Assembly (NCBI GenBank): GCA_010909165.1
Contig: MU008232.1
Coordinates: 1 to 27,500 of the forward strand
Source: Anthoceros angustus
Taxonomy: Eukaryota; Plantae; Anthocerotophyta
Reading direction: 5' to 3'
DNA length: 27,500 nucleotides
Part shown: positions 740 to 22,264 of the stretch, piece after piece
Layout of the letters: each line of letters starts with the position of its first letter
Numbering within the stretch: position 1 is the stretch's first letter
The notes under the pieces: generated by a model
Told to the model about the DNA's origin: nothing
What the model saw: only the letters and a program-made list of their open reading frames with translations
The model's database searches: none
Translations under genes and position numbers: made by a program

Positions 740-3700
740 TCATGTTGTAATGGGTGGCATAGAAAACACCCTGAGCCCAAGGGCAGCCATATGTTTGTAA
801 TGTTTCGTCTTGGGCAAGCCCTTAGTAAAGATGTCTGCCGTGTTATCCTCTGTACTAACATATTGCACTTTGACCATGCCCCTTTCAGCAACATCACGGA
901 CATAGTGATGATAGAGTTCAATATGTTTGGTTCTGGCGTGAAACCTAGGATTGGACACAAGGGCAATAGCGGACATGTTGTCGCAGTGGAGAGTAGTAGG
1001 GTCAACCTGAGGTAAGTGAACTGCATCTAAGAACCGCCTTTTCCCACTCTAATTTTTGCACGCTGTGGCCTGTACCGGCCTCGTTGAAGAGAGTGCCAAC
1101 GACATCGCTTTACAAGACCAATTGATAGCCCCGAGGCAAGAAGAAACACATATGCATGTATCAGAATCAAAGATCGGGACGCCCAACAAGATCTCAAGAA
1201 TGTCAGAGCAAGAACTCCCTCTGTCCACTGGATTCGTATTGCAGACCATAATGCAAGGTGCCCTTAAGATATCTGTAAATTCTCTTAACAGCAGACCAGT
1301 GGGCTTTTCCAGGGTTCTTCAAGAATTGGGAGACAACGCTGACCGAGTAGCTTATATCAGGCCGAGTCCAGTTGGCCAGAAAGATAAGGCATCCCACGGC
1401 CTCAGCATATGGGATAGGCGTCATGGCAAGCTCACTATCAGCATCCTGTGGAGACTGTGCCAAAGTAAGTTTTTCACCCACTGCTGAGGGTGTAGAAACT
1501 GGCCGGGCAGCGTCCATGTTGAATCTTTTAAGAATCTCTTTAAGATACTTGGTTTGATGAAGGACCATCGAATGACTTATCACGAATCAATGCCTGTGCA
1601 ATATTGAAGAGATCCCTGGTCTGTCATCTCGAATTCAGAGCGAAGAAGAGTTTTTACTTGGTCAAGGTGCTGCATACTGTCACTAAGGAGGATGGCATCA
1701 TCCACATAAAGGGCCAGAATCACAAAGGAGTCTCCAGAGATGAGGTAAAACACATTGGTATCTGCAGGAGACTGAACAAAACCATGTTGCTTGAGGAATT
1801 TCATGATCCGTTTAAACCATGCCCGAGGGCTTTGCTTGAGCCCGTAGATAGTTTTCAACAATTTGCACACCTTGTTTGGCCAGCGTTTGTCAACAAACCC
1901 TTCAGGCTGTTCCATAAAGAGAACCTCCTCCAATTCCCCATGGAGGAATGCTGTACAGACATCCATCTAATGGAGCTCAAGGTCGAACTCCGCAGCCATA
2001 GCAAGTAGTATACTATTGCATGGCGGCTTTACTACCGCGTAAATGTATCCCCATAATCGATACTGTATCCGCGAGAAGCCTCTAGCAACCAGACGTGATT
2101 TATAACGTGCAATCGTTCCATCTGCTTTTAACTTAGTCTTGAAGACCCATTTGCGGTGTGATCGATTTTGCGGCCTGTGGCAAGTCCGCCACCCTGTATG
2201 ATTTTTGATCAAAGAGTTATACTCTTCATCGATGGAAACTCGCCAGTGTTTGCCATCAGGTCCATTTAAAGCTTCAGAATAGCTTTGAGGATCTGTTCTG
2301 ACAATAGGAACATGCAGGTCAGCTACATGTACACCTGATCTGCGAAAATGAACCGATTGATAGGGTGGCTCAATCCAGTCCTCACGAGCCCTTCGTTCTC
2401 TTGTAGGGTATCGTGGAAGAGAATTAGCTGCTGGAATAGTTCCCTCTGGATCTACATCTCCCGGCGTGAGGGAGGTGCAAAGATCCTCCATGTAGGTAAC
2501 AGGGTCCATTTCAAGTGCTACAGAACCATTCTCTGAAAGTTCATCCTCTGCAGCATCGACGTGATCAGGTATGTCAGGTAGCACATCATAGGCAGCATCC
2601 TCTATAGGAACGTTGTCAATATCACCATCATAAACAGGTTGGATGGCTCCATGTGTAGGAGCATGTGCTCACCAAAGGCATCCAGTCGTAAATCGCCAGG
2701 CTCCATCCGACATGTGGTAGGTTGTTGGAAGAGAATGTTGATCAAGTTCAAAACCTAGGGAGCTGCTAGCAGAGAGTTCAGGACCGTCTAACTGTTCCAC
2801 ATGTGAAGTTGTCCTTGGGGTAAGTAATTCCTTGAAGGTGGCACTCCTAGACAGAACGATTTTGCGAACTTCAGGGTCATACAACTTGTAGGCCTTCGAC
2901 TCCTCTGAGTAGCCAAGAAAGATCATTGGCTTAGACCTGTTATCTAACTTGCCTCGCTTTGGTTCAGGGATATAGGCAAAAGCAAGTGATCCAAAAACCC
3001 TCAAGTGTAGGAGGCTAGGTTTACGATCCCACAAAGCCTCATATGGCGTTCTACCAGGAAGGGCGGAAGTTACAACTCAAGGCGGGCAGTATCTACTATC
3101 GCCCGCCCAAGAGGACGAAGTGCACTGTGATAGCATGTTGCGCACCATACCCATCAGTGTCTGATTTTTCCTTTCTGCCACACCGTTCTGTTGTTGGGTG
3201 TAGGGAATGGAAAGCTGACGAGTGATGCCATACAATTTTGAATGAAGTCATCAAACTTTCTCCTGAACTCGCCCATTTATGCAAGGGAAACACTTCACCT
3301 GCTTTGTCAGCACCATGAGAATCCATGTTGAGATGGTCTCAAAGACATCACTCTTCAGCGCCAGTGGGTATGTCCAAGTATAACGAGAATAGTCATCTGT
3401 CAGCGTCAGGTAATACTCTGCCCCTCCAAGTGATTTGACCGGCAGTTTACCGGCTATGTCTGCATGAATGAGCTCTAAAACTGCTTTTGCACGAGTTGCA
3501 TTCTTGTTTTTAAAAGGGAGCTCCTTTTTCTTTGATAAAATGCAGGAACTACATGCTACAAGGTGCTTAAAACAAGAAGGAAGACGCTCACGATAGCAGT
3601 TAGAATTAGACATCAAATCAAGCTTGGAACGGTTGACATGACCAAGACGGGCGTGCCACAGGTTGGCCTGTGCATTGAAAGCTGCTAGTAAGGCTCGAAC

Positions 3701-3893
3701 CTTTGACTTTGAGACTGTTACTAGCTGATACAGGTCGTTCACTAGAATGGCTTTTGCAATGTAGCTGCTTGGGTTAGACAGCAAGTAGACATAACAACGC
3801 TTGTCTTCAAACCTAAAGCCATATCTGTTACTCTGGACAATAGCACGTATTGACAATAGATTCTTACTCATGTCAGGTACAAAGAGGACATCA
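740..3893 (-). pseudogene. Copia A pol, 3' part: protease C-terminus, integrase, RT, RNase H (frameshifted)
   Basis: DVLFVPDMSKNLLS; LWHARLGH...C..C; ELIHADIAG, LTDDYSRYTW; SH3-like HLRVFGSLAFAYIPEPKRGKLD; DPQSYSEAL, KARLVARGF, MDVCTAFLHG, LYGLKQSPRAW, LYVDD, TRPDISYSV; RNase H SAIALVSNPRFHARTKHI...NTADIFTKGL. Confidence 0.92.
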
Positions 3894-3908
3894 TCTAGAT
3901 TCTAGATG

Positions 3909-3929
3909 ATATTTATACCGTCGGAATAA
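3909..3929 (+). repeat. Left degenerate (sub)terminal inverted repeat of the insert
   Basis: ATATTTATACCGTCGGAATAA versus the reverse complement of 13475-13494, ATATTCATAACG-CGGAATAA: 18 of 21 positions match with one gap. Confidence 0.45.
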
Positions 3930-4375
3930 ACAGGAAGCGGCTTTTTCAATGAATAAACTGGTAACCGGCGGGAACATGGGAACAAAACGCCTGATCCTGC
4001 CATTTTCCACAAAAAATGGTTCAAAATTACGGTTGCTTTGTGTGCAGGAAGCCGGGATAATGTCATGACATAGGCTGGAAAAGGGATATACAACCTCGAT
4101 GGGCACACACATTTGCCTTGAAATAATGCCCATACATGACATTCTTGGTGGTGAAGAGGGCAGAGAGGCCTCTTGCTATTCATTCAAGACGTAAAGGGTA
4201 TATGATTTTGGAAAACCGTTTTAATGAGGGAGTAATAACTATTGGAGATGACAATGAAAATTCAACATGCGGTGCAAGTCCCTGTTTCCATCTTCCGAAA
4301 TCAAGACATGCAATTCGTTTCCATGCCTCGGTGTGTGTTTTGTACTGTCGAGTCTCACCTTCATGGATGGGTGCT
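3910..4375 (-). pseudogene. Probable last exon of an unidentified gene inside the insert
   Basis: Preceded on the minus strand by a GTAAGT...TTGTTTTTCTTTGATAG intron-like segment (~4437-4376). Reads APIHEGETRQYKTHTEAWKRIACLDFGRWKQGLAPHVEFSLSSP..., then PIEVVYPFSSLCHDIIPASCTQSNRNFEPFF... after a frameshift. No family recognised. Confidence 0.3.
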
Positions 4376-4427
4376 ATCAAAGAAAAACAATCGCAAGGGG
4401 AACAAAAGTCTCGGAAGAGTGAGGAGA

Positions 4428-5150
4428 TTGACTTACCTTAGAGAGAACTTTTGGACGCATGGACTCGAGAAATTCCGCCCCTTCTGACAAACATCGAAAC
4501 ATATGGATATTGAACTGTGCAGGGAGGTATTGTCAATGGGCGCGGCATGCGGCGCCTCCATATCTATATCTTCTCTGAGACGGTGAAACAAGTGACTTAC
4601 CTTGGGCGAGAACTCGTGGGCGGGTCCCGAAATGCCGTCCCCTTCGACAAAGCGTTGTAACATATGCGGAGTGGGCGTATGGGGCGGTGTAAGCATGAGG
4701 CGCCTCCACTGTTACGCCCCTAACAAGTGACTTACCTTGGAAAGAACTAGGGACACATGGACCCGAAATGCCGTCCCATCGACAAGCGTTGAAACATGAG
4801 GAGCGAGCATGCGGGCTAGGGTATTGTCGGTGGAGCGCCCGGCATGCGGTGCCTCCACTATCTATATTTTCTACAAAGCGGTAGAAACAAGTGACTTACC
4901 TTGCAGAACTCGTGACGCATGGCCCCTGCCATCCCTTCGAAAACGTTAAACACATGAGGTGGTGTAGCGGGGGTGGAGGTGGAGGCGGCGCGGCGCCTCC
5001 CTGTTATACCCATAGAAACAAGTGACTAACCTTGGGCTAGGGAACACATGGACCCATGAAATGCCATCACATGTGACAAATGTTCAAACATATTAGGAGT
5101 GAATGCAGCTAGGGTATTGTCAATGATGGCGGATGCGGCCTCCACGGTGG
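4428..5150 (-). repeat. Tandem array of ~5 units alternating ~164 and ~133 bp (higher-order dimer ~297 bp)
   Basis: The anchor ACTTACCTT (usually AAACAAGTGACTTACCTTG) occurs at 4431, 4595, 4730, 4894 and 5025 (spacings 164, 135, 164, 131). Units also share GGCGCCTCCA and CATGGACCCGAAATGCCGTCC. Confidence 0.9.
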
Positions 5151-5499
5151 AAGACAAGCGGTAGACCACGTAAAAGCATGGACCCAGAACGCCTTCATTA
5201 CATAGCGGCGTAAAAGCGCGACCGGTGTTCAGCCAACCTATCTAGTAGCGGCCGAGTATGAAACTCGGAAGCCTACGCTAACTCTATCGTGAAAACAAAA
5301 CCCTAAAATCTCTAGTCTTGGGACCGAATTCCTTCGTCAACCAAAGGACATCCATCATCCACTTCATAGTCCACTATCTCGAATAGCCTTCTCAGCGTAA
5401 AGGTGCTTTCTTGCATTGAGGTTGAACCCATAATAGAGAATAATAGTCTTGCTGAATTTAGTAAATTTCTCTTTCCCACTCTCTTCCCATTTCGCGATC

Positions 5500-8050
5500 G
5501 TCGATTATCGGTCCTCTAACAAAGAACTCCTCAACATATTTCCCTTCAAAAGCATCGGTGCTCGATCTGTACCGTGGACCATAAGAAATGGTTCGCTGCA
5601 AGTCTCGCTTTCCACCTTCCCAATCCGAAAGCCCTTATGTGTATCTCCGAGCATGGAGTTGCAATGAACATGCCCTTCCTTATCTCTTTGACATCTCCAT
5701 TCATCCTTTCTATTTCTTGATGTTGTCGACTTGCATTCGTGAGCTCCCAAATACATATCCCGTTGAGGAACTTCTCTTAGTAATGCTTCATCAAGCACAA
5801 CCTCCTCCGGCACTTGAAGTGGCGGCATGGCCCTCCACCTCTTCTCTGTACCACCTCCACGGTTGTTTAAGCACTAGAGCAATATTGTTCTCCACAATAG
5901 TGGCAATTCCTTCTGTCGACCCAAACAACCTCCACCACACCCTCTCCGATGGCGTGATATACGTCGCAAGTTCGAAGCCATGTCATGCGCCGCCACACCG
6001 CACGGAAAGACCTCCATCTTGACCCTTTTTGTCTCTCGCCTTGCGGCATGAGGGAGTGGGGCGTCGGTGGTTGATGGAACAAATTTCAAAATTCCAACCA
6101 TCTTGATTCCCATTGAGGGATGTTGAGTCTTACTTGAATGGCGTAACTTGACCTCGGTCCGCCGTTCCTCTCTCGTGATTTTAAATTGATGTTGGAAGGA
6201 AAGATTATTCAAGTTCCGGCCTTGTATGCATATCCTCTCGTCCCTTCTTAATGGGCCATACATAAGACCGAAAATCGCCACCTCTGTTAACTTTAACCCG
6301 CGTTGGGGTGAAAGCTGTCAAAATCTCCAGTGTATCAATAGTAAACGCTTCTTTGTGCCTAAGAAGCTTGAGCAAGAAAACATTTGATCAACCTGATCAT
6401 GGGTATGACCAACCAATAGGAACCCAACCTTTATTTTAACGAACACCTGAAGGTCGATGAGCATATTTAGGTACGCGAATAGTAGCTGGTTCTTGTTCTC
6501 GCGGCAAGTATTATCCAGCTGGAGGTAAAGAACTTTAGGAAGCACCCCTTCGTAAGAAAATATGACATCCTGAATTATATGGATAGTGAGATTGGCGTCG
6601 TTGTGCAGATTAGCGTAGTGTAAATATGCCCTCGCCTTGAAAGTGTAATTATGTATCATACATCCCACCACATGAACATTAATAAGTGATGCCTCTGCCA
6701 ACTCTTTGGGATATCGGAGGAAATGAGGGAGCTCTGCTCTTCTTGGTCCATGCCATCGATAGCTGCATATACTTGTGGGCTGACTATAACTTTTGGACCG
6801 ATGTTTTTGCTTTGTCTCTCTCATTGCTTAGTCGCACCCTGTGTGATGCCAAAGCTCCTTCGTAAACCTCTGCAAAAATGGAGACGGGACGAGTATTATA
6901 TCAGACAGTATTGTTGCACAACCAGTCTACCTGTAACATGAACATGGGTGCAGTTAATCTACGCTGAGGCGCCGGCATGCTTCCCCCGGACCGACATGCG
7001 GAAAAGCTTTGGGGCACCTCCGCCCTCCCAGGCGCTCGAGGGGCCACCGGCCTGCTGCGCCCATGTGCATGTCTTGAAGGGTCTGGGCCCCGGACAATGG
7101 AAGCACTCTTGCCTACAGCAACCTATGTGAGTCTTGCACATTGGTATCTACATTGCCACACCTCTGCGACAAGCGCCAAACTGCGGTGGCCCACCTTTTA
7201 AGAATACATATGCATATACACTCACGACATATGTAAACGGTCATGCATCCTTCCGCAAAATGGTTCTTAGAAACTATGCACATCCCCAGGATATGAAGAA
7301 CAAACCTTGTGCCTCTGCGGAAGTGTTCCGGATGGTGCGCTTGATCCTTCACATAAAGAGCAAGTGGAAAACCTATTAGACTTTGGAATCCTAACCTTGG
7401 AAGTTGGTCCTCCGGTCGAGAAAATAGGGATCGACCCAGGCGCATACTAGACCGTGTCATATCCCGATCGGGCCCGGATCTCCAACTTTGAGAACGTGCG
7501 GTGGAACACATCAACGTTTGGCAGCCTTTCCGCCATCACTTGAAAAGCTATCCATCGAACCCGCTCCCGTGTGTAGATGGTTGTCGCGGATTCACTCTTG
7601 ACCCATCCACGGTGCATTGCATAACACCACGCTCTTCAACTCCTCGCCTCTCGAGATGCGATACTCTTGAAAAGCTTGCAAACAACACCGAATGCGTCGC
7701 CCCCATTATATGCGTGATGACCTTGTCCTTTCGGTGGCCTGTAAGTCCACGACCGGAAGAAATGTCTCTTGCTCGCCCTCCCATTCGCAAAAATAACGTT
7801 GCTCATGGAAATTGGCCTTAGACATTGGAGACGCATTGCTTGTTGCGGCATGGCTTAGAAGTCCGTGACGTCGGAGTCTTCTTCGACAAAGGAACTCCAC
7901 TTGCCCGCCTTCGAACCACGGATTGCATGTCCGTGGCGCCACAAATGTTTCTGGTTTGGGGTGGAATGACCGTGCGTCGGGCGGTCGCCTTCCCTGTCTC
8001 ACTAAAGGTGCATCGCCGAGGGTTCGAGAACACCCTCCTTTCCTCAATTG
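5500..8050 (-). pseudogene. DUF7869-like / Sola-like DDD transposase (frameshifted; ends approximate)
   Basis: Motifs in order on the minus strand: Cys-rich C.NKQC...FHEQR.F (~7850), F...AERLPNVDVFH (~7530), VRIPKSNRFSTCSLC (7351-7389), IDGMDQ (6743-6760), VLYLQLDNTCRENKNQLLFAYL (6489-6524), FLLVGHTHDQVDQMFS (6387-6410), C-terminal HQFKITR (~6180). Confidence 0.8.
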
Positions 8051-10904
8051 GAAACAAACCCCGACGGCCTTGGCGTGGGAACTATTCGGTTCTTCATGGC
8101 GCGGCCACTAGGACTCCGCTCCACGGTGAATACAAATTGATGTTCCTTGGTGTCGAGGAACACCCGAGGAATCCTTGGTGAGGTCTGGACCCGCCTCCAA
8201 CCTTCATGCAACGCGCCCGGCATTTGGTGACACATCGGGGAACTAGCCTCTTACAGTGTTGTTGGCATGCGTGAGGGCAGAACTACACGCGAAATTAACA
8301 CACGACCATCTACTACCCACAAGCCATTTGGAGATGCGGTGTGTTGTGCATCGCAGGACGGAGGATCGGACGCATTCAATCTTGCATTGCGTTTCCTTTT
8401 TCTTGTCGACTCTCGGTTGAAGCTGCGATGACAAGTCCTCCCTTCAACATGAAACGCCGAAGTTTAGCTGGGAGAAGAACATCAAGGGAACATTATTGCA
8501 TGGAGTGCATTGGATACAACAAAGATCGCTCACTTCAGCCCATGCGGTGAGTCTCTGTAACATTCCCGCGACGATGCCACTTCACGACACAAAGCAGTGT
8601 GTTCTCCTGCAGGAAAAGGGAAATATAACGTCAAGCCACCAACTTCAACGCACACGAAAGGCGCTGGCCGCTCAATGCACAAGTTCTAGACCTATAACGG
8701 CAAACAATCATTACGCCATCGTAATGGCGCCTCCGCCAAAACGACACCACCATTAAGAGGTGTAGTTAGGACATTATCCTAAAATGGAATTTATGTATTA
8801 TATGCGTTCGCGAATCCATGGAGGTTACGGTGAGAATCGGGCAAATGAAGGGAACCCTAACTTCTTGTCCGGGCGTATAAGGTCTTTTAAAACCATTTCC
8901 CCACGTCCACACGAAGCGGGCTTTACGTCCCTTCAACTTTGTGGTGTGCGGACTCCTGCGGGCGAGAAGAGGGAGTGATTCAACGCTTGCGGTGGATGCG
9001 CGTGGGCCTTTGAGGATCATCCCCACGCAAGGAGGTGTTCTTCTCCCCAATTGTTGCTTTCCACCTCAAAGTGAGAACTCTAATCGATGCAATTTGGTTG
9101 ATGCGTCCGCGTTCCTTGTGGCGAAATCATGGCATCGGGAGGGCTCTCGAGCAAGAAGGACCTAGCGGCGCCTACGCTTGAACCACCTTAGATTGTGCGG
9201 CGAAGAAACCGAAGAAGGCGACTCGGGGAGGAAGTCGCGGATATGGCGGCAATGTCCGACAAGGATGGTGGCGCCAGGCGCAGCAACCGAGCATCGGGCG
9301 TGCAAGGATGTGGGTGGGGCGGAAGAAATCGAGCTCGGAATTCAGCAAAAGCCGGCCACGGAGGCGGGCAGCCACGAAAGACAAGGAGGCTTGAAGGGAA
9401 GAAGAAAGCAACCCGATCCTGTGCCTTCGCCATACAACTTGGAAGAAACTATGCTCATCGGGCGCGACTAACTCAATCGATGCATTAATTGTCTAGGGAA
9501 GGAGTGGTTTTGCAAGAGCGGCGTTGGATGATCTTGACCATATGGACAACAGGCATGGGTTCTGAGGTTTGGACCAGCTAAGCCAAAATCAGAGCAAGAG
9601 TTGGCTGGGTTGTATGGGCAAGTCTGGATTTAGCAGGAACGGGTCGAGATCCTCCTTACAACAAAGCCACACCTGGATGAAATTCGCCCTGCGGAGGAGT
9701 TCAAGGTTATCACCGTGGGCCTTGGGATGTTCAAGCTTAAGAAGTGTTCCCCGGATGTCTGCCTTCCGAGAGGCTAAGCAGAATCAACACGTATGGACGG
9801 GTTGGCTAACATTGCATTGTTGTGCTTGAACGTGCTTTTCATTTCTTGCATGTAGGCATGAGTTGGCTTATGGGTTTTGTGTGTCAGCAGTGGGAGGGCT
9901 TTCTATAAGCAAGCGTGTGCTTTTGTCACATCTATCGTGGACCACCGAGAGAAATGAGCATCGGCGAACCGGGGCAGCCCTCCCCAAAATCACGACGGAG
10001 GACCTCTCGGGCAGCTCGGAGGAAGAGGAGCTGGGCCCGAAGATGAGCATGATGGACCATTGCCCGACATCCTTGGACAATCCGAAGATGATGGAAGAAG
10101 CGGGATGACTTGGAAACCGAGGTTAGAGATGCATTAATAATGGATTATGACATGCCTCGACTCTATGCTTGTGCCCAGTCCCTTATAACCCGCCCACGGT
10201 GGCGGCATCTGCCGCGCCGACTCCATTCCAGGTGAGTCCGCCAACCTCGGCATGTATGGATGTGGCGGAGCAAGGAAGAGGAGGCGGCCGGCCTACGTGC
10301 GGTGTGGAGTCCTCCCAACCCCCATGCAGGCATGTTTATGGATGTGGCGGGGAGCAAGGAAGGGGCGGCGCATGCGGCACTCCTCCTCCCACAGCGCCAC
10401 CCTTCTACTATACCAGTGCTATGAGCTATCGACCCGGCCGTTGGATTGTCGGGAGGGCTGGAGGAAAGGCAAAGCAGCGCACGAGGAGCAGCCGAACACG
10501 ACACCCAAGTCCGGATCATTTGGTAATTTGTTGGCGAACCGAGCTAGTCATTTTGATACAAGGCCGGGATCCGGAAAGAGGAAGCAGTGATGCAAGAGGA
10601 TGCGAGCGAGAGTTTGGAGCCGAACATGGTAAAATACGGAAGAAAGCAAAGACTACGGGAACTATGTCACCAGTGGAGACATTCCCACAGTGCACCTTTC
10701 AGATGAAGAGAGGTTGGAATCTTCCTTCCACGAGGAGGACTACCTCACCCGAATTCGAGATGCAGACATGTCAGAAGGTGGTGGTGAGGCTCTTGGTAAG
10801 CTGGAGAATCTGCGGCTGCCTCTTATCTAACCCGGATGCAGATTCGGCGTGTGGATGAAGCGTGGACTAATTATCTCGGCTGATTGGAAGGGCCGAGTTG
10901 AGGA

Positions 10905-11200
10905 GGGCGTATTGCCCCTTTGTGCATGATTGATCCCAAGGAGTGTGATGATCTAGAGGACTGGGTGGAAAAAGTTCGAGGCAAAGAAATACATCATGGG
11001 TGTGTTAGGCGGGAACCACACATTTGCGGCAATGCAACATTTGGCGGACATATCACCGATGAAGAGCGTTTCAAATGGATAGAGGCACATGTATTGTGGG
11101 CGACCACAGAAATGAGGGTTTTGGCGATCGTCACAATGTCGACAAGCGGCGGAAGATGTCGTTCATAGAGCAAGTAAGATATCTCGAGATGATGAGTTAT
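10905..11200 (+). CDS. ParB/Sulfiredoxin-like domain (across frameshifts)
   Basis: PL(L)CMIDPKECDDLEDW...KFEAKKYIMGVLGGNHTFAAMQHLA (VLGGNHTFAAM at 11002-11034), then LA.(R)HNVDKRRKMSFIEQVRYL (11121-11180). This matches the GxNH..A motif and downstream HN...MSF.E pattern of ParB-like domains. Confidence 0.65.
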
Positions 11201-12180
11201 AGCCAAGCGGGATGGCGTGCATATGTCCATGAATTGGAAGTTCAACTATAAGGTATTGGGTCTTATCGAAGATGATGAAGGACGGGAAGATGATGCCTAC
11301 AAAGCGACAAGGTTGACAACGGGCGCACATCTTGTGCATAGCGAAGTTGGAAGGAAGGGTATGGGAGAATGTGGACAAAATTTTTGCAAAGTGGGAGGCT
11401 TGTGACTTGCCGGAAGAAACATGTGGCGGCGAGAGCAAAAGAGCAAAGGCAAAGCGGAAAGCGGCGGAAGAAACGAAACAAGTTGAGGGTATATTGGTGA
11501 AGCCCAAGGAGATGCGAGACAAAGCCATGGCGTTGCTTTCAAGGTATTCTGCGGGGAGGCGGGCAACAAATGCTTATTAGTGCCACGAGAAAGTTCTCCG
11601 GCCTTATGGATTTGAAGGAATGTCGATGAAATTATTATAATTGCATATCATCCAAGTGGCCATGGCGAAGCACTTAGGATGTTCATCTTTTGAGATGGTG
11701 AGGCAAGAGTACCCACAACATTCCACCGACAGTAGTCGCAGTTCAGGCCTTTCGAGGGAAAGGTATGTTATCATACTCTCTTGTTTCTTAGAACTTTATG
11801 CAGGCGGGAGGAGGAGGCGGCAGGCATGCCGCCCTCCTCCTCACTCCCTCAGCTGTTGTCGCTTGGGGCGCCGCATCGCCGCCGGAGTGGCGCGGCATGC
11901 ACCCGCAGGGTTGCACGAGGAGGGCCCGCATGCGCCTGCCACCGGGTCTAGATGCAGGCCCTAAGTGCGGGGAGGCCGGCATGCGCCCTCCCTCCGACAT
12001 CTAATATTGACAAGCATCCTGTTTTGTGCAGCAACAAAGACATTGAAGTCCTTACCAAGTGCCCGAAACTTTCAACGGTTCATTTATGAGGTCAACACTT
12101 GGAAGGGCTTGGAGGATGAGACGAGCTCAGATAGAGACATAGAAGAGGGATTGTTGCACACATCCCGATCGGAGAAAAAA

Positions 12181-12800
12181 AATGATGTCATTCATGCTCG
12201 AGATGCGGGATATGCGAGGTTTTGTGAGGAAGAGGAGTTACTCTTTGCTTGTGATGGATGTCCACGTGGATTCGAGAAGGGCCCAAAGGATGGAAGGTTT
12301 GATATTTGGCAAGTTGGTAATGTTTTGCATTCCTTCCATGACTTGGTGAATCGCGATTCGGGATGATCATAATGCATGGTGTGGAAGATTCACATATTGT
12401 GGAGCCTGCGGAAGTGGTGCGGAGGGTGGTCTTGTTTCATTTGTGTGGGACAAGACAAATGTCAACAACGACAAGGGTGGGTTTGATACGGTGGAGTATG
12501 TCACCGCGTCGGGTGAAAGAAAAGCTCCGAGTTGCAGTACATCATGTTACCTAATGTTTTGCAGGCACTTTCAATAATGGTCGGTCGGTGATTGCCCACC
12601 ATACGGTTGTGAAAAAGTTGGTTTATCATTCACTTGACAAACTTGTTGTGTCCCTACCGTGCCTTTAGGTTTGATGATGAAGCTTATCAAGACATTCTCC
12701 AAGGAAGGACTGGATATTGGATGCATGTCGGTAGTGGGTCATCTTTAATGTGCCTTGTTGTCGGCCATTGTATTTCTATCGAGGCGGACAAGAGGTGTCT
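12181..12800 (+). CDS. Beta-class N4-cytosine/N6-adenine DNA methyltransferase domain (N6_N4_Mtase-like; frameshifted)
   Basis: In beta order: VIHARDA (12187-), motif IV-like MDV(P)xGF (12254-12273, indel-damaged), I(I)M.WC strand, LVSFVWDKTNVNN...VEYV (12440-12502), RSVIAHHTVVKKLVYH, CPY(QK)PLGLMMKLIKTFSKEG(D)WILDAC(x)GSGSSLM (12650-12750), GHCISIEADKR (-12795). Confidence 0.8.
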
Positions 12801-13474
12801 AATTCATTCCAGCGTGTACATGGATATGAAGTCACGGATGCGGAGGAGGCGACACATGAGCCGCATCGTCGTGGTCCATCTCAATTACAGGCCAAGGAGG
12901 TTTGCGTCGTGAGAAGGATATTGGGAAGGCTCAAATTGTGCCTCTAGGGTCGGGCGAATGAAAGAAGGGGAGACCACGATGAGGGCAAGACACTAGAGGC
13001 ATATGGCACACCTCACGGACGGGAAGGAAGACGCAGCGCGATGATGATTGACTCTTTGAGAGACGGATGAAGCGTCGAGAAAGCGTCACCGTAGTTCACG
13101 ATAGTGAAGCCGGTTTTGTGTGCGGTTGAATCTTGAGACCAACTTCCTTAGGTGGCTAGAACGTTTTCTTCTTTACTGCTGTATATCGTATGGGCCGTTG
13201 TCTTTGGAGTGGATGACACGGATCTTCTAGTAGCAAGTTGTTCGTCGCCATGAGGCCGTTTTGAATACATCCGGACGCACTCTACTTATAATCGAGCATT
13301 GCCGCTTGTCCGCAAGCATCCGCACCTTGGCACCTTCATTGCACCCTTTGACACGAAATTCAAATCTCAATCACAATGATTGCTTGCGGCGCATGTGCCA
13401 AGAGACGTGTTTGGAGTGAATTAGTAATCGATGAAAAGTACCAAGCGGCGGTAATTTTTTCCATAACCGCGACA

Positions 13475-13494
13475 TTATTCCGCGTTATGAATAT
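13475..13494 (-). repeat. Right degenerate (sub)terminal inverted repeat of the insert
   Basis: TTATTCCGCGTTATGAATAT, partner of 3909-3929. Confidence 0.45.
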
Positions 13495-13501
13495 GAATAT
13501 T

Positions 13502-14671
13502 ATCAGACAGAGCAAGAAAGATCCATCCAAAGAAGGGTAACTTAATCAACCGTCCTTTGACACCAGAGTGCCTCTAGAGTCACCGACATAAGCTGGGAAG
13601 GATCACCGAAGGTTGAGAATTGATCTCGATCAAGTGCGGCATGAAGGTTGCTCAGTCTACAAACCAACGAAGAGCTTTTCTAGACGGCAAGTGAGCAAAC
13701 TAAGTAGTCGTGATCGCGCTTCGAGGCTGTGATTGCTGAGACCCAGAGCTCTTGAAGTCCTTGGATGCCAAATGGGCTTCAGATTTGGGCTCTCGCTTTG
13801 GATCACCTGCCTTCTTTTTTTCGATGGCTCCCAAAGGGCTGTAGATGCCACACTGGGCCAGCATTCACAGGCTTGGTCGGAGAAGCGTAAGAGTTGGCAA
13901 ATCGACCAGTTGTTGCTGTTGCTTCTTTCCTCTTTCCTTCCCCTTCCAAGGTCCTTTTGCTTTAGCATAGAGGGCCTTTTCGCCCCTGAGGGGAGTAGTG
14001 CCTGATCTGTGGCGACTCTGTTCTTCTTGCAGAAGAGAGCCCACCACCTCATTCAAGCTTATCATCGAAGGACGTCCAGCAGCCACAGCCTTGTAGGAGT
14101 CTCTCAAGATGGAATTTTGGCTAGACACAAAGTTTTGGTAAGATGGAGGCAAGCTAGACAGTAGTTGAGCAGTCACATCCAATTCGGTCATCGTACTGCC
14201 TAGTGCGGCTAACTGAGCCCGTAGGTAACGCAACCGAGTGACATGAGCTCCAACAGAGTCTCCTTCCTTCAATCTTAGTCCAAAGAAATCATTCCTAGCA
14301 GTGACCAATGTGAGAATGTTCTGAACTTGGTAAGTTTCCTTGAGCTGACTCCAAACTGCTGCAGCTGATCCCAGAAACTCGACTTCGGAGATGGTGACTT
14401 CATCAAGTCCTGACAAGAGGATGGCAAACGCGACCTTGTTCCCTTTATTCCATTTAGCTATTTCATCGTTAGTGCCTTTGGGATCAGCCTTGGAAGGATC
14501 AGGTAGGGAGCCATCCACATACTCCCACACGTCTCTTGCATCCAGGTTAGCTCTCATCCTTGCTTTCCAGCCTTCAAAACGTCCAGGTTTCCCATCGAAA
14601 CGATCTTTCTCTTTGAATTCACCAGAATAAGATGAGCCAATGACATATGACGTTCCAGATGGACCTGACAT
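13502..14671 (-). CDS. Copia A gag and protease N-half
   Basis: ORF 13865-14770 has a copia gag fold (KDRFDG...WKARMRANL..RDVW..V, F..LRLKEGDSV..HVTRL, LLSSLPPSY..FV, LLQEE). A garbled zinc knuckle lies near 13850, then WFVD(SG)ATFH near 13660 and YVGDSR..., ending at LALSD at 13502. Confidence 0.85.
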
Positions 14672-15049
14672 TGTGTTCTGTGATGGGGATACGAATTGCA
14701 GCCAGAAAAATGGATCTGACATGAAAAGTCTCCAGCCAGAACAGAAACTGGATCTTAAAAGGTGTGCCAAAGGAAGCCCCAGATGTGAAACAACACTACC
14801 AGGTACGTTAAATTGTTTTTATGAAACAAGAAAACTAGGAAACCCTAAATTCCATGTCACATGAAAGCTAACTGACAACGGTTGGTTGTGAGCGCATAGG
14901 CTAGCAACGAGAAGCCTGGTGCAGGGCGTGATCACTTGGACAGATCTCAACAGCACACAAACATCAAGCGATCGTCTGCGGGTCAATCCAAAGGGACCTC
15001 TCTCCTTAGAGGAGTCTTCTGTGTCGCTTCAAATCTGGATCATATGGAA

Positions 15050-17836: not shown

Positions 17837-18069
17837 ATAGGTCCGGACCATCTCCCCGCTATCGATATTGCTCAAGTTGTCAGGAATGACAGTCGAGTCT
17901 CAGATAGGTAAGGTCTAGTAACTCCATCTCAGAGTCTTCGACTTCTGCCTCGAGAGCATCCTGTGGATATTGTGAATCTGAAGTTTCTCCCTCGATGAGG
18001 TTAGAGTCTCCCTAAGAATCCAAATGTGATAGAAGTCCGTGTGCTACTGTTCGACAAAAGTAAATAACC

Positions 18070-18989
18070 AAGCAATACAACTGCTGGGTGGCAGGATTAT
18101 AAAGTTTGTAGGCCTTGACTTGTTCACTGTAGCCTACGAAAATAAGAGCTTGGGCTCTCGGATCCAGCTTCTTTCGCTTCTCCTCTGGGATGAGAGCAAA
18201 AGCTCGTGAACCAAAAACACGGAGATGGAGTAGGCTGGGTTTCCTGTTCCAGAAAGCTTCAAAAGGAGTTTTCTTAGGGACTGAATGAGTGAATAGCCTG
18301 TTGAGCACATATGTGGCTGTAACAATTGCTTCAGCCCAGTATCGTGGTGGAAGGCCAGCCCATAACAACATGCTGCGTGTCATAGAGAGTAAGGTCTGAT
18401 TCTTATGCTCTGCTACACCGTTCTGTTGCGGTGTATATGGTACAGTTAATTGTCTTTGGATGCCATGTTCCTGCAGTAGATTATCAAAGGCATGATTGAC
18501 AAATTCAGTGCCATTGTCTGTACGAAGCAACTTGAGAAGATGGCATGTTTGTCGTTGAACAGTCACAAGCCAATCACGAAATGTCTCAAAAGTATCACTT
18601 TTCTGTTGCATAGGATATGTCCAGGTATATCTTGAAAAATCGTCCGTTAGACAGAGATAGTAATGAGATCCTCCTACTGAGGGGACATGAAGCTTTCCTG
18701 AAATATCCGCGTGTACTAACTCAAGTACTTGTGTTGCTCGATAGGTGGCCAAGGACGGAAAAGGCTGCTGCTTTTGTTTGGCAACAATACATGCTTCACA
18801 GGATGGAAGGTCCTTAAAGCAGCGAGGTAATGGCTCGAGGTGACATTGCTGAAGAGACATGTCCACAAGTTTGTGCTTGTTCACATGTCCGAGCCGAGCA
18901 TGCCAAAGAACAGCCAATTTTTGTGTATCCTTGGAAACCAGACTTGCCTGATGGCGCATAGGAAATATGTCCAACTTGTACAAGTCATT
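18070..18989 (-). CDS. Copia B integrase copy 2 (complete HHCC, D-D35-E, SH3-like), in frame with copy 1
   Basis: Within ORF 18012-19448: NDLYKL...LWHARLGH...CEAC, HADISG (D ~18707), RTDNG (D ~18518), NGVAEHKN (E ~18410; D-35-E spacing), HLRVFGSRAF...YKLY. Confidence 0.92.
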
Positions 18990-19046
18990 ATCTGGAGCTG
19001 GGGTCACTCCCTCTGAAGGTAGGGGCTCTCCCATAGATGAATGTGG

Positions 19047-19900
19047 TTCCAAGAAGGTGACTCTTTGTGCCAGAACAATGGTATGTCGATGCTTGTCATA
19101 AAGTTTATAAGCTTTAACACTCTCGCTGTATCCTACGAAAATAAGACCTTGTGCCCTATTGTCTAACTTCCTCCTCTTTTCGGCAGGGATATATGCGAAA
19201 GCCCGAGAGCCGAAGACGCGGAAATGAAGAATGCTGGGCTTACGCTTCCAAAGCACCTCATAGGGGGTCTGCCCTTTTACAGAACTGGTAAGCACCCTGT
19301 TCAGTATGTAGGTGGCAGCCACCACTGCCTCTGCCCAGTATCCTTGGGGGAGTCCAGCCCAAAGCAACATGCTGCGAGTCATGCCGAGTAAAGTTTGATT
19401 TTTACGTTCGGCAACTCCATTATGTTGTGGTGTGTAGGGTACCCACACCGACGTTGAATTCCCGCATCGAGGAGGTAGGCATCAAACTATGCATTGATGA
19501 ACGGGCTACGCTCGAAACCATTTAACGGTCCAGCTTTGCACGCACTGTGGAGTCACCATGAACACCTGGAAAGTATCACTTTAGTCGCATGGGAAGGTCC
19601 ACGAGACTATACCGGTAAGAGTAAGGTAATACCGAGAACCTCCAAGCGATGGCTCATGAATCTTCCCAGAGGTGTCAGCATGTATTAGTTCTAACACATG
19701 ACTGGCCCTATGTGCAGGTGTGCTTGAAAATGGCTGTTCCTTCTGCTTAGCAAGTATACAGGCTTCACAAATCGGAAGGTCCTTGAAACATCTAGGTAAG
19801 GGTTCTCGATAACAGTCCTTTGCAGCCATACCAATAAGCTTTGCCCTATTGGCATGACCGAGCCTGGCATGCCAAAGGGAAGCTAACACTTTTGAATCTA
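19047..19900 (-). CDS. Copia B integrase copy 1 (HHCC, core, SH3-like)
   Basis: LWHARLGH..CEAC, ELIHADTSG (D at ~19676), garbled second-Asp region (~19510), VPYTPQHNGVAERKNQ (E at ~19409), HFRVFGSRAFAYIP...YKLY...TFLE. Confidence 0.8.
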
Positions 19901-20519
19901 GCCGACTGTCCTCGCTGATGTAGCCGTTGGAAACCTACAATGGATGTTAAGACTGTGATGCATCACCAGAATGCCTTTGAACACTAGCCAGCGGAACAAA
20001 GATAGTGTGGAAAGAGCGAAGTCGTGTCTCCAAACATGCCGTAAAGTTTCGTGACTCATCACCGCCAAGGACATGAGGTTCTTCGCCATTCGTGGAACAT
20101 ACAAAACATCTTCCATCAGTCGCCTTGTCATGTAACTCGAAAATGCATTTACCACGCCCTTCAATTCAAGGCTCTCACTCTTCTCGTCACCCAACAAAGA
20201 CCTTATCATGGATATGTGAGGTGTCCGTAGCAGAACAATTGTCCTCAGATATGTGGGCGCACTGAATCTGTACCAATTGTCCCTATCATGGAAGGAGTTG
20301 GAGAGACATACGCGGTAGATTTTGACTCCTTTGATGTTCTCTCGCAGATGAGGAAGAGTCGCTTGAGCTCTTGTCCCACAAAGAACACCGGTGGATGCCT
20401 TCATGGGGTTCACCGCCTTTTTACTAGCCTCGCCCAAGGACCTGCATGCCACACCGCTTGCCTGTCGCCTTCTTAGGAGTTGAGCCGATGATCCGTAATC
20501 ACCTTTGTTCGCCGGTCGC

Positions 20520-21305
20520 TTGCCCCTCCGCCTGTTAGGTTTAAACTTGGCCATTAATACTTTGTCTGCCTTTGGCTTAGAGCTTCCGGTAGAGAATGAT
20601 GGTCAGGCTCCTCCCCGATGCAAGGCAACCACCACATCTTCAATCGTGAGGGTGCTTATGCTCTACGGCCATGCACTGTCGTATACAAAGGTCCATTATA
20701 GACGACAAGCCGGAGGGATGTCGGCGCTTCAGAAATGACAACAAAGATGTTCCTCAAAGAATCTTACTAATGAAGCGAATGACGCAAGTGGCGGAATTAG
20801 TACAGTAAGGACCCACTTTCTCTCCCTCTTTCATTCTTAACGTATAATACTCTTGTCTAATAGCGCATTGTTGCATTATATTTGTGACCTGATAGGTCTT
20901 TTCTAACTGGTTCCATATCTCTATGCCCTTTGTGAGATACTCTATATCAGGGACAAGTATGGAATCCAGTCCATTAACCAAGACGGCTACAACAACTTGG
21001 TTATGTGCTTCCCACCTATCCTTATCAGCTTGATTGCCTGTGGCTGGATCAGGTTCAGCAAATGAACCACTGACCACACTCCAGACACCTCGTGCTATAA
21101 GGATGGCCTTGATTCGCACTCTCCATACAGGGTACTTAGTACCGTTAAACCGATCCTTCTCTTTCAAGTCTGATGTGAAAGATGGGTTTGACATATTTTG
21201 GTATGACTGTGCAACAGGGTTGATGGGATCTACTGGAGAAGAACTGGATGAGGAGTGGTGATGGATGTCACTATCCTCACTATCGTTGTAATCGAATCTG
21301 GACAT
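20520..21305 (-). CDS. Copia B gag
   Basis: ORF 20754-21305 has gag motifs and continues through frameshifts (LK..EDVVVAL, LINGQV.T.EA...). Confidence 0.8.
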
Positions 21306-21604
21306 GCAAACCAGCTAAGTCTCAACCCTAAAACTATGGTTTTGGGAAGACCAAAGAATGGTGTGCTGTCAAGCTTAAAACATGCATGTTATCTTAAGTA
21401 CAGCTAATGCAGACAATACGTGATAGGGGATTTTTAAGAAAAAGAGGAGGGGAGCATGAGAGGTAGTAGGTGGGCACCTACCTGATGAACAGCATGCTTC
21501 CTCCTTAATCTACCTTCCAAGAGACGTGTCTGTCCTGCAAAATTAACTTAGTGCACTTTCAAACATGAAACGTTACAGTTGAGTTCTTTTAGGGTTACTA
21601 ACCG

Positions 21605-22021: not shown

Positions 22022-22251
22022 TGTAAGGTGTTATTAAGCTCATAGACTAATACACTTAGTCTAAGTTAGGTGTCGATATCATTAGTTAGCTTAAGCTAAT
22101 CACTAGAAGCTTCTTGTGCTCCTTCCTAGGAGCTTCTTGTGGAGCTTAGAGTATTGAGGGTATAAATACCTCCAAGCCTCATCTCAAGAGAGAGTTACAC
22201 TTGCCTCCTCCTCTCTCCTCTTCCACCATCATGGCCGCCACACATCCTTCA
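22022..22251 (+). repeat. 5' LTR of copia C
   Basis: Aligns with 26768-27009; TG...CA ends; TATAAATA at 22161-22168. Confidence 0.92.
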
Positions 22252-22253
22252 AC

Positions 22254-22264
22254 CGGTATCGAGC
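22254..22264 (+). promoter_or_regulatory. Degenerate iMet PBS of copia C
   Basis: CGGTATCGAGC versus canonical TGGTATCAGAGC, two bases after the LTR end. Confidence 0.65.

What the first reader, a model, noticed from the sequence alone, without database searches (positions are those of the whole stretch)
12181..12800. Prokaryote-type N4C/N6A DNA amino-methyltransferase carried inside a plant DNA transposon
Seen: the ORF track hides this domain because indels split it over several frames. Re-joined, it has the beta-class motif order: catalytic-position motif IV-like DV(P)xG, FVWDKTN...VEY, HHTVVKK..CPY(QK)P, then the SAM-binding FSKEG(D)WILDAC.GSGSSL...GHCISIEAD. Known: this order typifies the N6_N4_Mtase family of restriction-modification and phage MTases. 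Eukaryotic members are rare horizontally acquired cases (bdelloid rotifer N4CMT, Marchantia 4mC methyltransferases). Inference: a cut-and-paste element in a land plant may deposit 4mC or 6mA, either to mark or protect itself or to evade 5mC silencing. It could also be a vehicle for such enzymes into plant genomes. Motif IV is indel-damaged, so target base and activity cannot be called, and the gene may be intact in the real genome.
Basis: partly seen in the sequence, partly recalled or inferred. Interest (0 to 1): 0.92.

Follow-up and report, generated by a model that had tools for sequence, protein, structure and literature searches.

The report
Dead transposon-borne DNA methyltransferase remnant
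This stretch is the broken remains of a bacterial/phage-type DNA methyltransferase gene carried as cargo by a dead Sola1-type jumping gene in a plant-like genome; the pairing is real, but it was published for algae and this copy cannot work.

Summary
One relative (L012) matches Pfam PF01555 N6_N4_Mtase above its curated cut-off (38.1 bits, E 2e-9). The window's own C-terminal blocks, joined with X at the breaks, hit PF01555 alone, but below the cut-off (16.9 bits, E 0.0064).

The remnant spans about 12056-12798. It follows a ParB-like remnant (about 10911-11623) and lies head-to-head with a DUF7869/Sola1-type transposase remnant (6072-6827, minus strand). All three sit in a roughly 9.6-kb element that splits a Copia retrotransposon. 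Relatives L007 and L012 have the same layout.

This copy is a pseudogene. It has at least 6 robust frame changes and at least 5 stops in every frame, and no RNA contig was found.

Motif IV is not a damaged DPPY. The family conserves D-I-P-H-G-[FY], and the window reads D-V-P-R-G-F, so catalytic activity is uncertain.

A Sola1 element with an opposite-strand ParB-like/N4C-N6A methyltransferase gene was published for Ectocarpus in 2025. This scan has also reported the same family several times on other DNA of this genome. Verdict: a new member of a known kind, of low to moderate interest.

The parts
3902..13504 (.). Sola1-type (DUF7869) DNA transposon copy of about 9.6 kb, nested in a Copia element; the ends are approximate to within a few bases
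   Evidence: Copia gag-pre-integrase/Pol_BBD lies at 3254-3901(-) and Copia gag at 13868-14818(-). Removing 3903-13504 joins the Copia protease region into one reading frame...SFLLCL|NLDDVLFVPDM....
3905..3970 (+). Left terminal region with a weak inverted-repeat match to the right end
   Evidence: Local alignment of 3895-3990 with the reverse complement of 13420-13512 scores 31. Shuffles give 18.3 +/- 3.4 with a maximum of 36 in 500. Support is weak, and no clean 4-bp target-site duplication was found.
13437..13504 (-). Right terminal region, partner of the left end
   Evidence: The Copia codons resume at 13504.
6072..6827 (-). Transposase core remnant (DUF7869, Sola1-type)
   Evidence: PF25273 DUF7869 at E 3.3e-37 for 6321-6827(-). 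It is 42% identical over 53 aa to the published Ectocarpus Sola1-1_Ec32 transposase core, E 5e-15. tblastn from relatives covers only 6072-6821.
10911..11623 (+). ParB-like part of the cargo gene, decayed
   Evidence: Frameshift-tolerant alignment to the L012 ParB-like exon scores 125, against 66.3 +/- 10.7 for shuffles, with 0 of 200 reaching it. The blocks include VLGGNHTFAA versus VIGGNHSAEA. The relative's part lies nearest to ParB_N clusters in the Atlas (42 of 100). There is no Pfam hit.
11814..11995 (.). Cluster of four GC-rich quasi-palindromes with a GCATGC core, between the ParB-like and methyltransferase parts
   Evidence: GCATGC occurs at 11824, 11895, 11928 and 11979 with GGAGG/CCTCC-type arms. 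Ten of the window's 17 GCATGC sites lie inside the element, and 9 of those 10 have GC-rich flanks.
12056..12798 (+). Beta-class (PF01555-type) amino-methyltransferase remnant; a pseudogene
   Evidence: The blocks lie in frames 2,1,2,1,0,2,1,0,1,2,0,1 (start coordinate mod 3). The three frames hold 5, 6 and 15 stops across 12056-12792.
12212..12363 (+). Motif IV-like region, SYSLLVMDV|PRGF..., with a frame break after 12262
   Evidence: The family consensus is Y[SA]LVI[AV]DIPHG[FY]NI. hhalign places DIPHG on DPPYG of the Vibrio phage jenny 12G5 DNA methylase. A contig from run X1 has an extra C after 12261, which puts MDVPRGF in one frame.
12425..12511 (+). FVWDKTN...VEYVTAS block
   Evidence: It aligns to YLCYRHKPN...IHLATW of the relatives, where the PF01555 match of L012 begins (profile positions 81-193).
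12662..12798 (+). Motif X/I region, PLGLMMKLIKTFSKEG|DWILDAC|GSGSSL...HCISIEAD, with two frame breaks
   Evidence: The X-joined read-through hits PF01555 profile positions 163-213 at E 0.0064. It is 9/16 identical to the phage enzyme's PVDLMEYLIKTYTNEG. The equivalents in L007 and L008 hit PF01555 at E about 3e-6, above the cut-off.

Best explanation
Window 12056-12798 (+) is the decayed methyltransferase half of a two-domain cargo gene. The gene has a ParB-like N-terminal part and a beta-class, PF01555-type DNA amino-methyltransferase C-terminal part. It belongs to a Sola1-type (DUF7869 transposase) cut-and-paste transposon.

The element is about 9.6 kb and spans roughly 3902-13504. It inserted into the protease region of a Copia retrotransposon. 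The cargo gene lies head-to-head with the transposase gene, as in better-preserved relatives. In this copy the transposase, the ParB-like part and the methyltransferase part are all broken, so nothing here is made or active.

At family level the gene has been under purifying selection, so it does something for the element. The most likely role is inferred, not shown: the ParB-like part binds element DNA, perhaps the element's own GC-rich palindromes, and the methyltransferase module marks or binds that DNA.

The catalytic motif is conserved but non-canonical. It reads D-I-P-H-G-[FY] in the family and D-V-P-R-G-F here, in place of DPPY. Whether the module still methylates, and which base, is open.
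For: Identity:
- Relatives hit PF01555 above its cut-off: L012 at 38.1 bits and E 2e-9; L007 and L008 at about 27.7 bits.
- The L012 exon matches annotated phage DNA methylases, E 5e-4 against 2.3 Gb.
- The N-terminal exon lies nearest to PF01555 clusters in the Atlas, 76 of 100 at score 0.87.
- hhalign places GDC...DIPHG on GDC...DPPYG of the phage enzyme.

Window copy:
- The frame-tolerant alignment is collinear: 0 of 300 shuffles reach its score, and its tiles rank top of 192.
- The X-joined blocks hit PF01555 alone, E 0.0064.

Transposon context:
- DUF7869 at E 3e-37.
- 42% identity to the published Sola1-1_Ec32 transposase core.
- The Copia element is split, and its frame is restored when the insert is removed.
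- L007 and L012 have the same head-to-head layout.

Decay:
- Frames and stops as listed.
- The ParB-like part is fragmented.
- Transposase similarity is limited to the core.
- No contig of the RNA-labelled run X2 lies on the stretch.

Selection in the family:
- dN/dS is 0.23-0.61 for the more diverged exon-1 pairs.
- The motif is conserved in about 90% or more of 99 ORFs.

Precedent:
- Ectocarpus Sola1-1_Ec32 carries a ParB-like plus N4C/N6A methyltransferase gene on the opposite strand to its transposase (PMC12477816).
Against: - The window's pieces give no Pfam hit singly, and none in two very large protein searches.
- The X-joined hit is below the Pfam cut-off.
- The frame-tolerant alignment has a high noise floor: the best unrelated tile scores 80 against 91.
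- Terminal inverted repeats are weak and no target-site duplication was identified.
- The ParB-like label rests on language-model similarity and a GGNH-type motif, not on a profile hit.
- The N-terminal half could not be confirmed by structure; the AF2 model reached only pLDDT 45.
- The run X1 contig differs from the window by almost as many indels as substitutions. That is unusual, and it leaves some room for assembly indel errors.
Confidence: 0.85

Rival explanations
1. The gene is intact and functional in the real genome. On this view the apparent frameshifts are introns plus assembly indel errors.
For: Several run X1 contigs match the window with 0 substitutions but one single-base indel. 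The 318-nt contig over 12128-12426 differs by at least 9 indels, one of which (+C after 12261) repairs the frame across motif IV. Relatives do contain introns.
Against: - The relatives read through 12511-12570 and through the FSGSG junction region without any intron that could absorb the window's shifts.
- The X1 contig still carries the break at DSG|MIIMHG.
- Neighbouring Copia ORFs of 317 and 489 aa argue against a generally indel-ridden assembly.
- The transposase and the ParB-like part are broken too.
- No RNA contigs were found.
- The X1 contigs have word depths of 45-250, so they are collapsed repeat copies, not this locus.
Confidence: 0.05
2. A rival about family-level function: the methyltransferase-like module is a pseudo-enzyme. 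On this view it binds S-adenosylmethionine or DNA but no longer transfers methyl groups, and it serves the transposon only as a DNA-binding or regulatory partner of the ParB-like domain.
For: The motif that aligns with DPPY is D-I-P-H in about 90% or more of 99 family ORFs and D-V-P-R in the window lineage. The first proline and the aromatic residue of the canonical (D/N/S)PP(Y/F/W) are both replaced. From established knowledge, METTL14, which has EPPL at this position, is catalytically inert. No profile recognises the N-terminal half.
Against: - The motif I glycine loop (FSGSG) and the motif X region are well conserved, and they score above the Pfam cut-off.
- The aspartate, one proline and a following G-[FY] are nearly invariant, which suggests a constrained active-site loop rather than free drift.
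- dN/dS is below 1.
- Histidine does occur at the fourth motif position in some amino-methyltransferases (recalled from memory, not checked here).
Confidence: 0.35
3. The motifs are a chance resemblance in decayed repeat DNA, and there is no methyltransferase homology.
For: No single piece hits Pfam, and large database searches with a piece found nothing real. Permissive frame-tolerant alignments score up to 80 on unrelated tiles.
Against: - There are twelve collinear blocks in the family's exon order, and none of 300 shuffled queries reaches the observed score.
- PF01555 is the only family hit by the X-joined blocks, out of 24,736 models.
- A ParB-like remnant lies just upstream, and a DUF7869 transposase sits in the arrangement the family predicts.
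Confidence: 0.02
4. The gene is a host gene or a separate horizontal acquisition that merely lies next to a transposase, not transposon cargo.
For: Terminal repeats and the target-site duplication are poorly defined.
Against: - Both genes lie within the single insert that splits the Copia frame.
- The same head-to-head pair occurs in L007 and L012 on other contigs.
- The stretch is multi-copy in run X1.
- The published Ectocarpus element has the same design.
Confidence: 0.03

Closest known systems
Sola1-1_Ec32 of Ectocarpus (Dinatale et al., Genome Biol 2025, PMC12477816)
   Same: The transposase is of Sola1 type: the window core is 42% identical over 53 aa, with shared DNTxxENKN and VGHTHxxxDQxFS motifs. 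[quoted passage not shown] Both elements are large.
   Different: - The host is a brown alga, whereas this genome is plant-like.
- The Ectocarpus element is 21.5 kb with 282-bp inverted repeats and a 4-bp duplication. Here the element is about 9.6 kb, with weak terminal repeats and no recognisable duplication.
- The Ectocarpus accessory protein sequence was not in the supplementary FASTA part read, so its catalytic motif could not be compared.
- This copy is dead.
Phage and bacterial beta-class N6_N4 DNA methyltransferases (Pfam PF01555), for example the Vibrio phage jenny 12G5 DNA methylase AGN51381.1
   Same: The motif order is the same: GDC...motif IV, then the W/Y-x-K-x-N block, the xQKP helix, and the FxGSG glycine loop at the C-terminus. 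The L012 exon is 32% identical over about 108 aa. The window's LIKTFSKEG-DWILDAC-GSGSS resembles the phage LIKTYTNEGDTVLDFACGSGTT.
   Different: - The phage enzyme has the canonical DPPYG motif. The family has DIPHG[FY] and the window has DVPRGF.
- The eukaryotic genes have introns, a ParB-like N-terminal part of about 490 or more aa, and an acidic tail.
Marchantia MpDN4MT1a/b and the bdelloid rotifer N4CMT (eukaryotic 4mC methyltransferases)
   Same: Both are prokaryote-derived beta-class amino-methyltransferases that now reside in a eukaryotic nuclear genome (PMC8885841 is listed).
   Different: - Those are host genes with the TSPPY/SPPY motif typical of 4mC enzymes and with demonstrated activity.
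- The Marchantia preprint does not mention a ParB domain.
- The present family is transposon cargo with a DIPH-type motif and no demonstrated activity.
ParB-HTH-fused 'chlorophyte-type Dam' methyltransferases (Iyer, Zhang and Aravind 2016, PMC4738411)
   Same: A ParB-type module is fused to an amino-methyltransferase in green algae and chytrids, and the fusion derives from phage ParB-terminase loci.
   Different: That clade belongs to the M.EcoKI/M.TaqI/Dam group, with a different motif order. The present family is PF01555 beta-class. The two are independent fusions of similar design.

Membership tests
N6_N4_Mtase (Pfam PF01555, beta-class DNA amino-methyltransferases) | Profile match at or above the curated cut-off (26.7 bits) | tested here: inconclusive
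   In the window copy the single pieces give no hit. The X-joined C-terminal blocks give 16.9 bits at E 0.0064, as the only family listed. Relatives in the same gene position pass the cut-off: L012 at 38.1 bits and E 2e-9; L007 at 27.8 and L008 at 27.6 bits.
N6_N4_Mtase (Pfam PF01555, beta-class DNA amino-methyltransferases) | Beta-class permutation: motif IV to VIII region N-terminal, motif X then motif I (FxGxG) C-terminal | tested here: met
   The window order is MDV|PRGF (12254-12273), then FVWDKTN (12440-12460), then PLGLMMKLIK (12662-), then GSGSS (12730-). The relatives have the same order, and so does the phage enzyme aligned by hhalign and tblastn.
N6_N4_Mtase (Pfam PF01555, beta-class DNA amino-methyltransferases) | Catalytic motif IV (D/N/S)-P-P-(Y/F/W) | tested here: not met
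   The family has D-I-P-H-G-[FY]. Of 98 residues at each column, the counts are D 86, I 98, P 89, H 95 and G 91. This motif aligns to DPPYG of a phage enzyme. The window has D-V|P-R-G-F, with a frame break inside the motif.
N6_N4_Mtase (Pfam PF01555, beta-class DNA amino-methyltransferases) | Intact S-adenosylmethionine-binding glycine loop (motif I) | tested here: not met
   The relatives have DLFSGSG. In the window the loop is split, with DWILDAC in one frame and GSGSS in another.
N6_N4_Mtase (Pfam PF01555, beta-class DNA amino-methyltransferases) | Methyl transfer to N6 of adenine or N4 of cytosine in DNA | not testable with these tools
   This needs a biochemical assay or methylation-aware sequencing of a host with intact copies.
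Sola1 superfamily DNA transposon | Transposase homologous to Sola1 transposases | tested here: met
   PF25273 DUF7869 at E 3.3e-37. BLASTP to the curated Sola1-1_Ec32 transposase core gives 22/53 identical residues, E 5e-15.
Sola1 superfamily DNA transposon | Terminal inverted repeats | tested here: inconclusive
   The ends align with score 31, against 18.3 +/- 3.4 for shuffles, and the shuffle maximum of 36 exceeds the observed score.
Sola1 superfamily DNA transposon | 4-bp target-site duplication | tested here: inconclusive
   The insertion point is fixed to within a few bases by the split Copia frame. No identical 4-mer flanks both ends; the nearest candidates are ATTC and ATC. The 4-bp figure comes from the Ectocarpus supplement.
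ParB/Srx-like domain | Profile or structural match to the ParB N-terminal domain | tested here: inconclusive
   The 488-aa L012 ORF gives no Pfam hit at E <= 1. L008 gives DUF6551 at E 0.009, below the cut-off. In the Atlas, 42 of 100 nearest named clusters are ParB_N and 25 are DUF6551, at scores of 0.90-0.92. The window keeps a VLGGNHTFAA block.
Eukaryotic 4mC methyltransferases (MpDN4MT1 / N4CMT type) | TSPPY/SPPY motif IV | tested here: not met
   The preprint states that TSPPY is their hallmark. The family and the window have DIPH and DVPR.

The most novel reading that the evidence does not exclude
The intact members of this family form a self-marking system of a land-plant-lineage DNA transposon. 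On this reading the ParB-like domain docks on the element's own GC-rich palindromes. These are the GCATGC-cored repeats in this window and the 35-nt palindromes in L012. The DIPH-motif methyltransferase then writes 6mA or 4mC there, either to regulate transposition or to shield the element from host silencing. That would be a non-5mC epigenetic mark in plants that is written by a transposon.
Probability: 0.12. Interest if true: 0.8.

Novelty: new member of a known kind. Interest (0 to 1): 0.33.

Why it matters
Transposons that carry their own DNA amino-methyltransferase are a recently recognised curiosity, described so far in algae. Finding the family in a plant-like genome extends its host range. 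The relatives include near-intact copies (L012) and show purifying selection. They also conserve an unusual D-I-P-H catalytic loop. Together these make a concrete question testable: does a eukaryotic transposon write 6mA or 4mC on itself? This particular copy adds only a dead example and one more instance of the gene arrangement. It cannot itself deposit any mark.

Tried and rejected
1. Pfam on eight single stop-free pieces of the window gave nothing relevant.
2. A word-indexed homologue search with 12100-12363 found no candidates.
3. An exhaustive phmmer search of 12028-12363 against 1.84 billion representatives gave only a repetitive kinase artefact, P0001.
4. I first read 12511-12570 and 12644-12662 as introns (GT...AG). 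I rejected this because the relatives read through both in one ORF.
5. I first took the frame of NDVIHARDAGYARFCEEEELLFACDGC as the true frame upstream of motif IV. I rejected this after the run X1 contig and the family alignment showed ...MRGFVRKRSYSLLVMDV|PRGF.
6. tblastn of the window pieces against the first loci gave nothing at E < 0.05. Only the reverse search and the frame-tolerant alignment showed collinearity.
7. Profiles of the N-terminal exon against PDB sequences found no methyltransferase.
8. AlphaFold2 on the exon-1 alignment gave pLDDT 45.5, so no fold search was run.
9. A fixed-spacing palindrome pattern found no matches because the spacing varies.
10. Direct frame-tolerant alignment of the window to the phage enzyme is significant against shuffles, but its upstream half is probably misaligned, so only the C-terminal blocks are used.
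11. Riccia locus L001 and loci L003-L006 have DUF7869 without a detectable cargo gene within the sequence fetched. L002 has the ParB-like part but has lost the methyltransferase part.
12. The organism could not be identified. Run names are coded, and the cluster look-up gave no taxa beyond Riccia sorocarpa for a 48%-identical transposase fragment.
Full report
**What is in the sequence**

Exact positions:
- MRGFVRKRSYSLLVMDV, 12212-12262
- PRGFEKGPKDGRFDIWQVGNVLHSFHDLVNRDSG, 12262-12363
- SRFGMIIMHGVED..., 12351-12425
- GGLVSFVWDKTN...VEYVTAS, 12425-12511
- FNNGRSVIAHHTVVKKLVYHSLDKL, 12570-12644
- LLCPY, 12643-12657
- PLGLMMKLIKTFSKEG, 12662-12709
- DWILDAC, 12708-12728
- GSGSSLMCLVVGHCISIEADKRC, 12730-12798

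The longest open frame in the region is 133 aa. The three frames hold 5, 6 and 15 stops between 12056 and 12792.

**Is it more than chance?**

The pieces tested alone fail. Pfam finds nothing relevant. A word-indexed search of 5.8 billion proteins finds no candidate. An exhaustive phmmer run over 1.84 billion representatives returns only a repeat artefact. The homology became visible only through better-preserved relatives, which were reached through the neighbouring transposase.

- Window 6321-6827(-) is a clear DUF7869 domain (PF25273, E 3.3e-37).
- Its homologues led to contigs L007 and L012 from a JGI metagenome. In both, a DUF7869 gene lies head-to-head with a multi-exon gene.
- A second route, through the ParB-like exon and the methyltransferase exon 1 of those relatives, gave L008, L010, L011, L013, L014 and 99 exon-sized ORFs.

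The C-terminal exon of that gene hits PF01555 N6_N4_Mtase above the 26.7-bit curated cut-off:
- L012: 38.1 bits, E 2e-9, profile positions 81-193.
- L007: 27.8 bits, and L008: 27.6 bits.

The L012 exon also matches annotated phage DNA methylases. The best match is Vibrio phage jenny 12G5, 32% identity over about 108 aa, E 5e-4 against 2.3 Gb.

The window blocks align to these exons in the same order. A frameshift-tolerant alignment of the 288-aa L012 methyltransferase part to 11950-13050 scores 90.9. Residue-shuffled queries score 53.4 +/- 8.2, with a maximum of 79.6, and 0 of 300 reach the observed value. In a scan of 192 tiles over both strands of the whole window, the two tiles on this region rank first and second, at 90.9 and 87.7. 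The remaining tiles average 50.9 +/- 9.2, and the best unrelated tile scores 80.2. This method therefore has a high noise floor, and the result is supportive rather than overwhelming.

The more specific test was to join the window's own C-terminal blocks with X at each break. Pfam then returns PF01555 as the only family among 24,736 models, at E 0.0064 and 16.9 bits over profile positions 163-213. That is below the curated cut-off. I count the observation as confirmed. Family membership of this copy rests on its relatives.

**Motif IV**

It is not. In 99 exon-1 ORFs the corresponding stretch reads Y[SA]LVI[AV]-D-I-P-H-G-[FY]-N-I. Of 98 residues at each column, the counts are D 86, I 98, P 89, H 95 and G 91.

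A profile-to-sequence hhalign comparison with the phage enzyme aligns GDCEKLANIVPKKEYSLVIVDIPHG with GDCLEVMKGIPSGSIDMILTDPPYG, so D-I-P-H sits on D-P-P-Y. The E-value is 0.0065 for that single comparison, but the HH probability is only 5.8%, so this is a lead. A protein-language-model search agrees: 76 of the 100 nearest named clusters to exon 1 are PF01555, at score 0.87, which is again a lead.

Other attempts on the N-terminal half gave nothing. PDB profile searches and Pfam do not recognise it. AlphaFold2 on the exon-1 alignment gave an unusable model, with pLDDT 45.5.

The window reads D-V, then a frame break, then P-R-G-F. A high-depth contig from an independent run (X1) carries an extra C after 12261, which puts SLLVMDVPRGFEKGP in one frame. 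The canonical (D/N/S)PP(Y/F/W) feature is not met in either the family or this copy.

**Context**

- Just upstream, 10911-11623 aligns collinearly to the relatives' ParB-like exon, with a score of 125 against 66.3 +/- 10.7 for shuffles, and 0 of 200 reach it. The blocks include VLGGNHTFAA against VIGGNHSAEA, and this part also has many frame changes.
- The ParB label is soft. There is no Pfam hit and only a sub-threshold DUF6551 hit. In the Atlas, 42 of the 100 nearest clusters are ParB_N.
- On the minus strand, only the DUF7869 core (6072-6827) is still recognisable.
- That core is 42% identical over 53 aa (E 5e-15) to the curated Sola1-1_Ec32 transposase printed in the Ectocarpus paper's supplement. 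The two share the DNTxxENKN and VGHTHxxxDQxFS motifs. The Sola1 label used in earlier notes of this scan is therefore supported.
- The whole unit sits between Copia gag (13868-14818, minus strand) and Copia gag-pre-integrase (3254-3901, minus strand).
- Deleting 3903-13504 restores one Copia reading frame across the junction. This fixes the insert to about 9.6 kb.
- The terminal inverted repeats are weak, and I found no clean 4-bp duplication.

**State of this copy**

Counting only blocks of 16 aa or more, there are at least 6 frame changes in about 740 bp. Counting all twelve blocks, there are 11. Two candidate introns that I first proposed are excluded, because the relatives read through both places in a single ORF. 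The relatives' introns after exon 1 and after FSGSG have no counterpart in the window.

Run X1 holds many short contigs at 85-100% identity with word depths of 45-250, so the family is multi-copy in that organism. Its 318-nt contig over 12128-12426 differs from the window by about 10 substitutions and at least 9 indels, yet it still shares the break at DSG|MIIMHG. This suggests, but does not prove, that an already defective subfamily amplified. It would also explain why the nested element looks more broken than the older Copia around it.

The near one-to-one ratio of indels to substitutions is odd, and it leaves a small chance that assembly error contributes. The companion RNA-labelled run had no contig on the stretch.

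**Family-level function**

Exon 1 shows dN/dS of 0.23-0.61 between the more diverged copies and about 1 between close copies. This is the pattern expected for a gene selected in active lineages that decays after insertion.

L012 looks nearly intact. Its transposase is in two ORFs of 744 and 613 aa, and its cargo gene is in long exons.

Not every copy keeps the gene. L002 has the ParB-like part but has lost the methyltransferase part. No cargo gene was detected within the sequence fetched for L001 and L003-L006.

The mechanism I favour is that the ParB-like part docks on element DNA and the methyltransferase module then marks it. This is inferred from the domain content and from the published suggestion for the algal elements. 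Nothing here tests it, and the DIPH motif makes an inactive module a serious alternative, which I put at about 0.35.

**Comparison with what is known**

- Dinatale et al. 2025 describe Sola1-1_Ec32 of Ectocarpus. [quoted passage not shown] - Their supplement names a Repbase element, Sola1-1_PPa, as the best match of that transposase. By Repbase naming this is a moss element; that reading is my own knowledge and was not checked.
- Iyer et al. 2016 describe ParB-HTH-fused methyltransferases in chlorophytes, but these belong to the Dam/TaqI group, which is a different class (PMC4738411).
- The Marchantia 4mC enzymes carry TSPPY, and the preprint mentions no ParB domain.
- I found no paper on this family in land plants. 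A search for DUF7869 returned no papers.

This scan has already reported the same family several times on other DNA of this genome (s1-257989, s1-257985, s1-278000, s1-270519 and others). My results agree with those notes.

**Verdict**

The feature is real and was correctly recognised. It is a dead copy of a cargo gene of a known kind of element in a new host group. Interest is low to moderate for this locus. The family itself, and L012-type intact copies in particular, is the better object for experiments.

Noticed in passing
window 4545, 4842, 6975, 10370, 11824, 11895, 11928, 11979: GC-rich quasi-palindromes of about 26-30 nt with a GCATGC core and GGAGG/CCTCC-type arms recur inside the element only. 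Ten of the window's 17 GCATGC sites are in the element, and four of them are clustered at 11814-11995, just upstream of the methyltransferase remnant. They could be binding or target sites.
   Followed up: partly
L012 7351-7385 and 7438-7472: In the AT-rich relative, the region between the transposase and cargo genes holds two copies of a 35-nt GC-rich palindrome (GGGGGCTGGGGCGATG...CATCGCCCCAGCCC; 97% complementary arms). The sequence differs from the window's palindromes, but the design is the same.
   Followed up: partly
L012 2582-11316: This is a near-intact family member on a 42-kb metagenome contig. Its transposase is in two long ORFs (744 and 613 aa), and its cargo gene is in long exons with a PF01555 hit at 38 bits. 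It is the best template for experiments.
   Followed up: partly
L008 4680-4682; L008 595-2700: This relative has an in-frame stop where other copies have tryptophan (ATW-TKDD). It also has a reverse-transcriptase-like insertion just upstream of its ParB-like exon.
   Followed up: no
L002 4400-6600: This relative has a DUF7869 gene and an intact-looking ParB-like exon but no methyltransferase part. The cargo gene is therefore not retained in every copy.
   Followed up: partly
window 12425/12426 and 12728-12735 versus L012 10453-10524 and 11009-10957: The relatives have introns after exon 1 and after the FSGSG glycine loop. The window lineage has none at either place. Intron content therefore differs between lineages of the same transposon gene.
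   Followed up: no
window 22250-23020: A block of about 65% GC and roughly 750 bp has long overlapping Ala/Arg/Gly/Pro-rich open frames on both strands. It looks like low-complexity sequence rather than a gene.
   Followed up: no
window 18015-21314 (minus strand) and 23340-26125 (plus strand): Two further Copia-type elements or fragments lie here. One includes a 489-aa open integrase-region frame. The window is a nest of retrotransposons.
   Followed up: no
window 10169-10858 (+): A 229-aa GC-rich open frame upstream of the ParB-like remnant consists largely of repeats (GGATGTGGCGG...GCAAGGAAG...). It is probably non-coding repeat sequence that includes the palindromes above.
   Followed up: no
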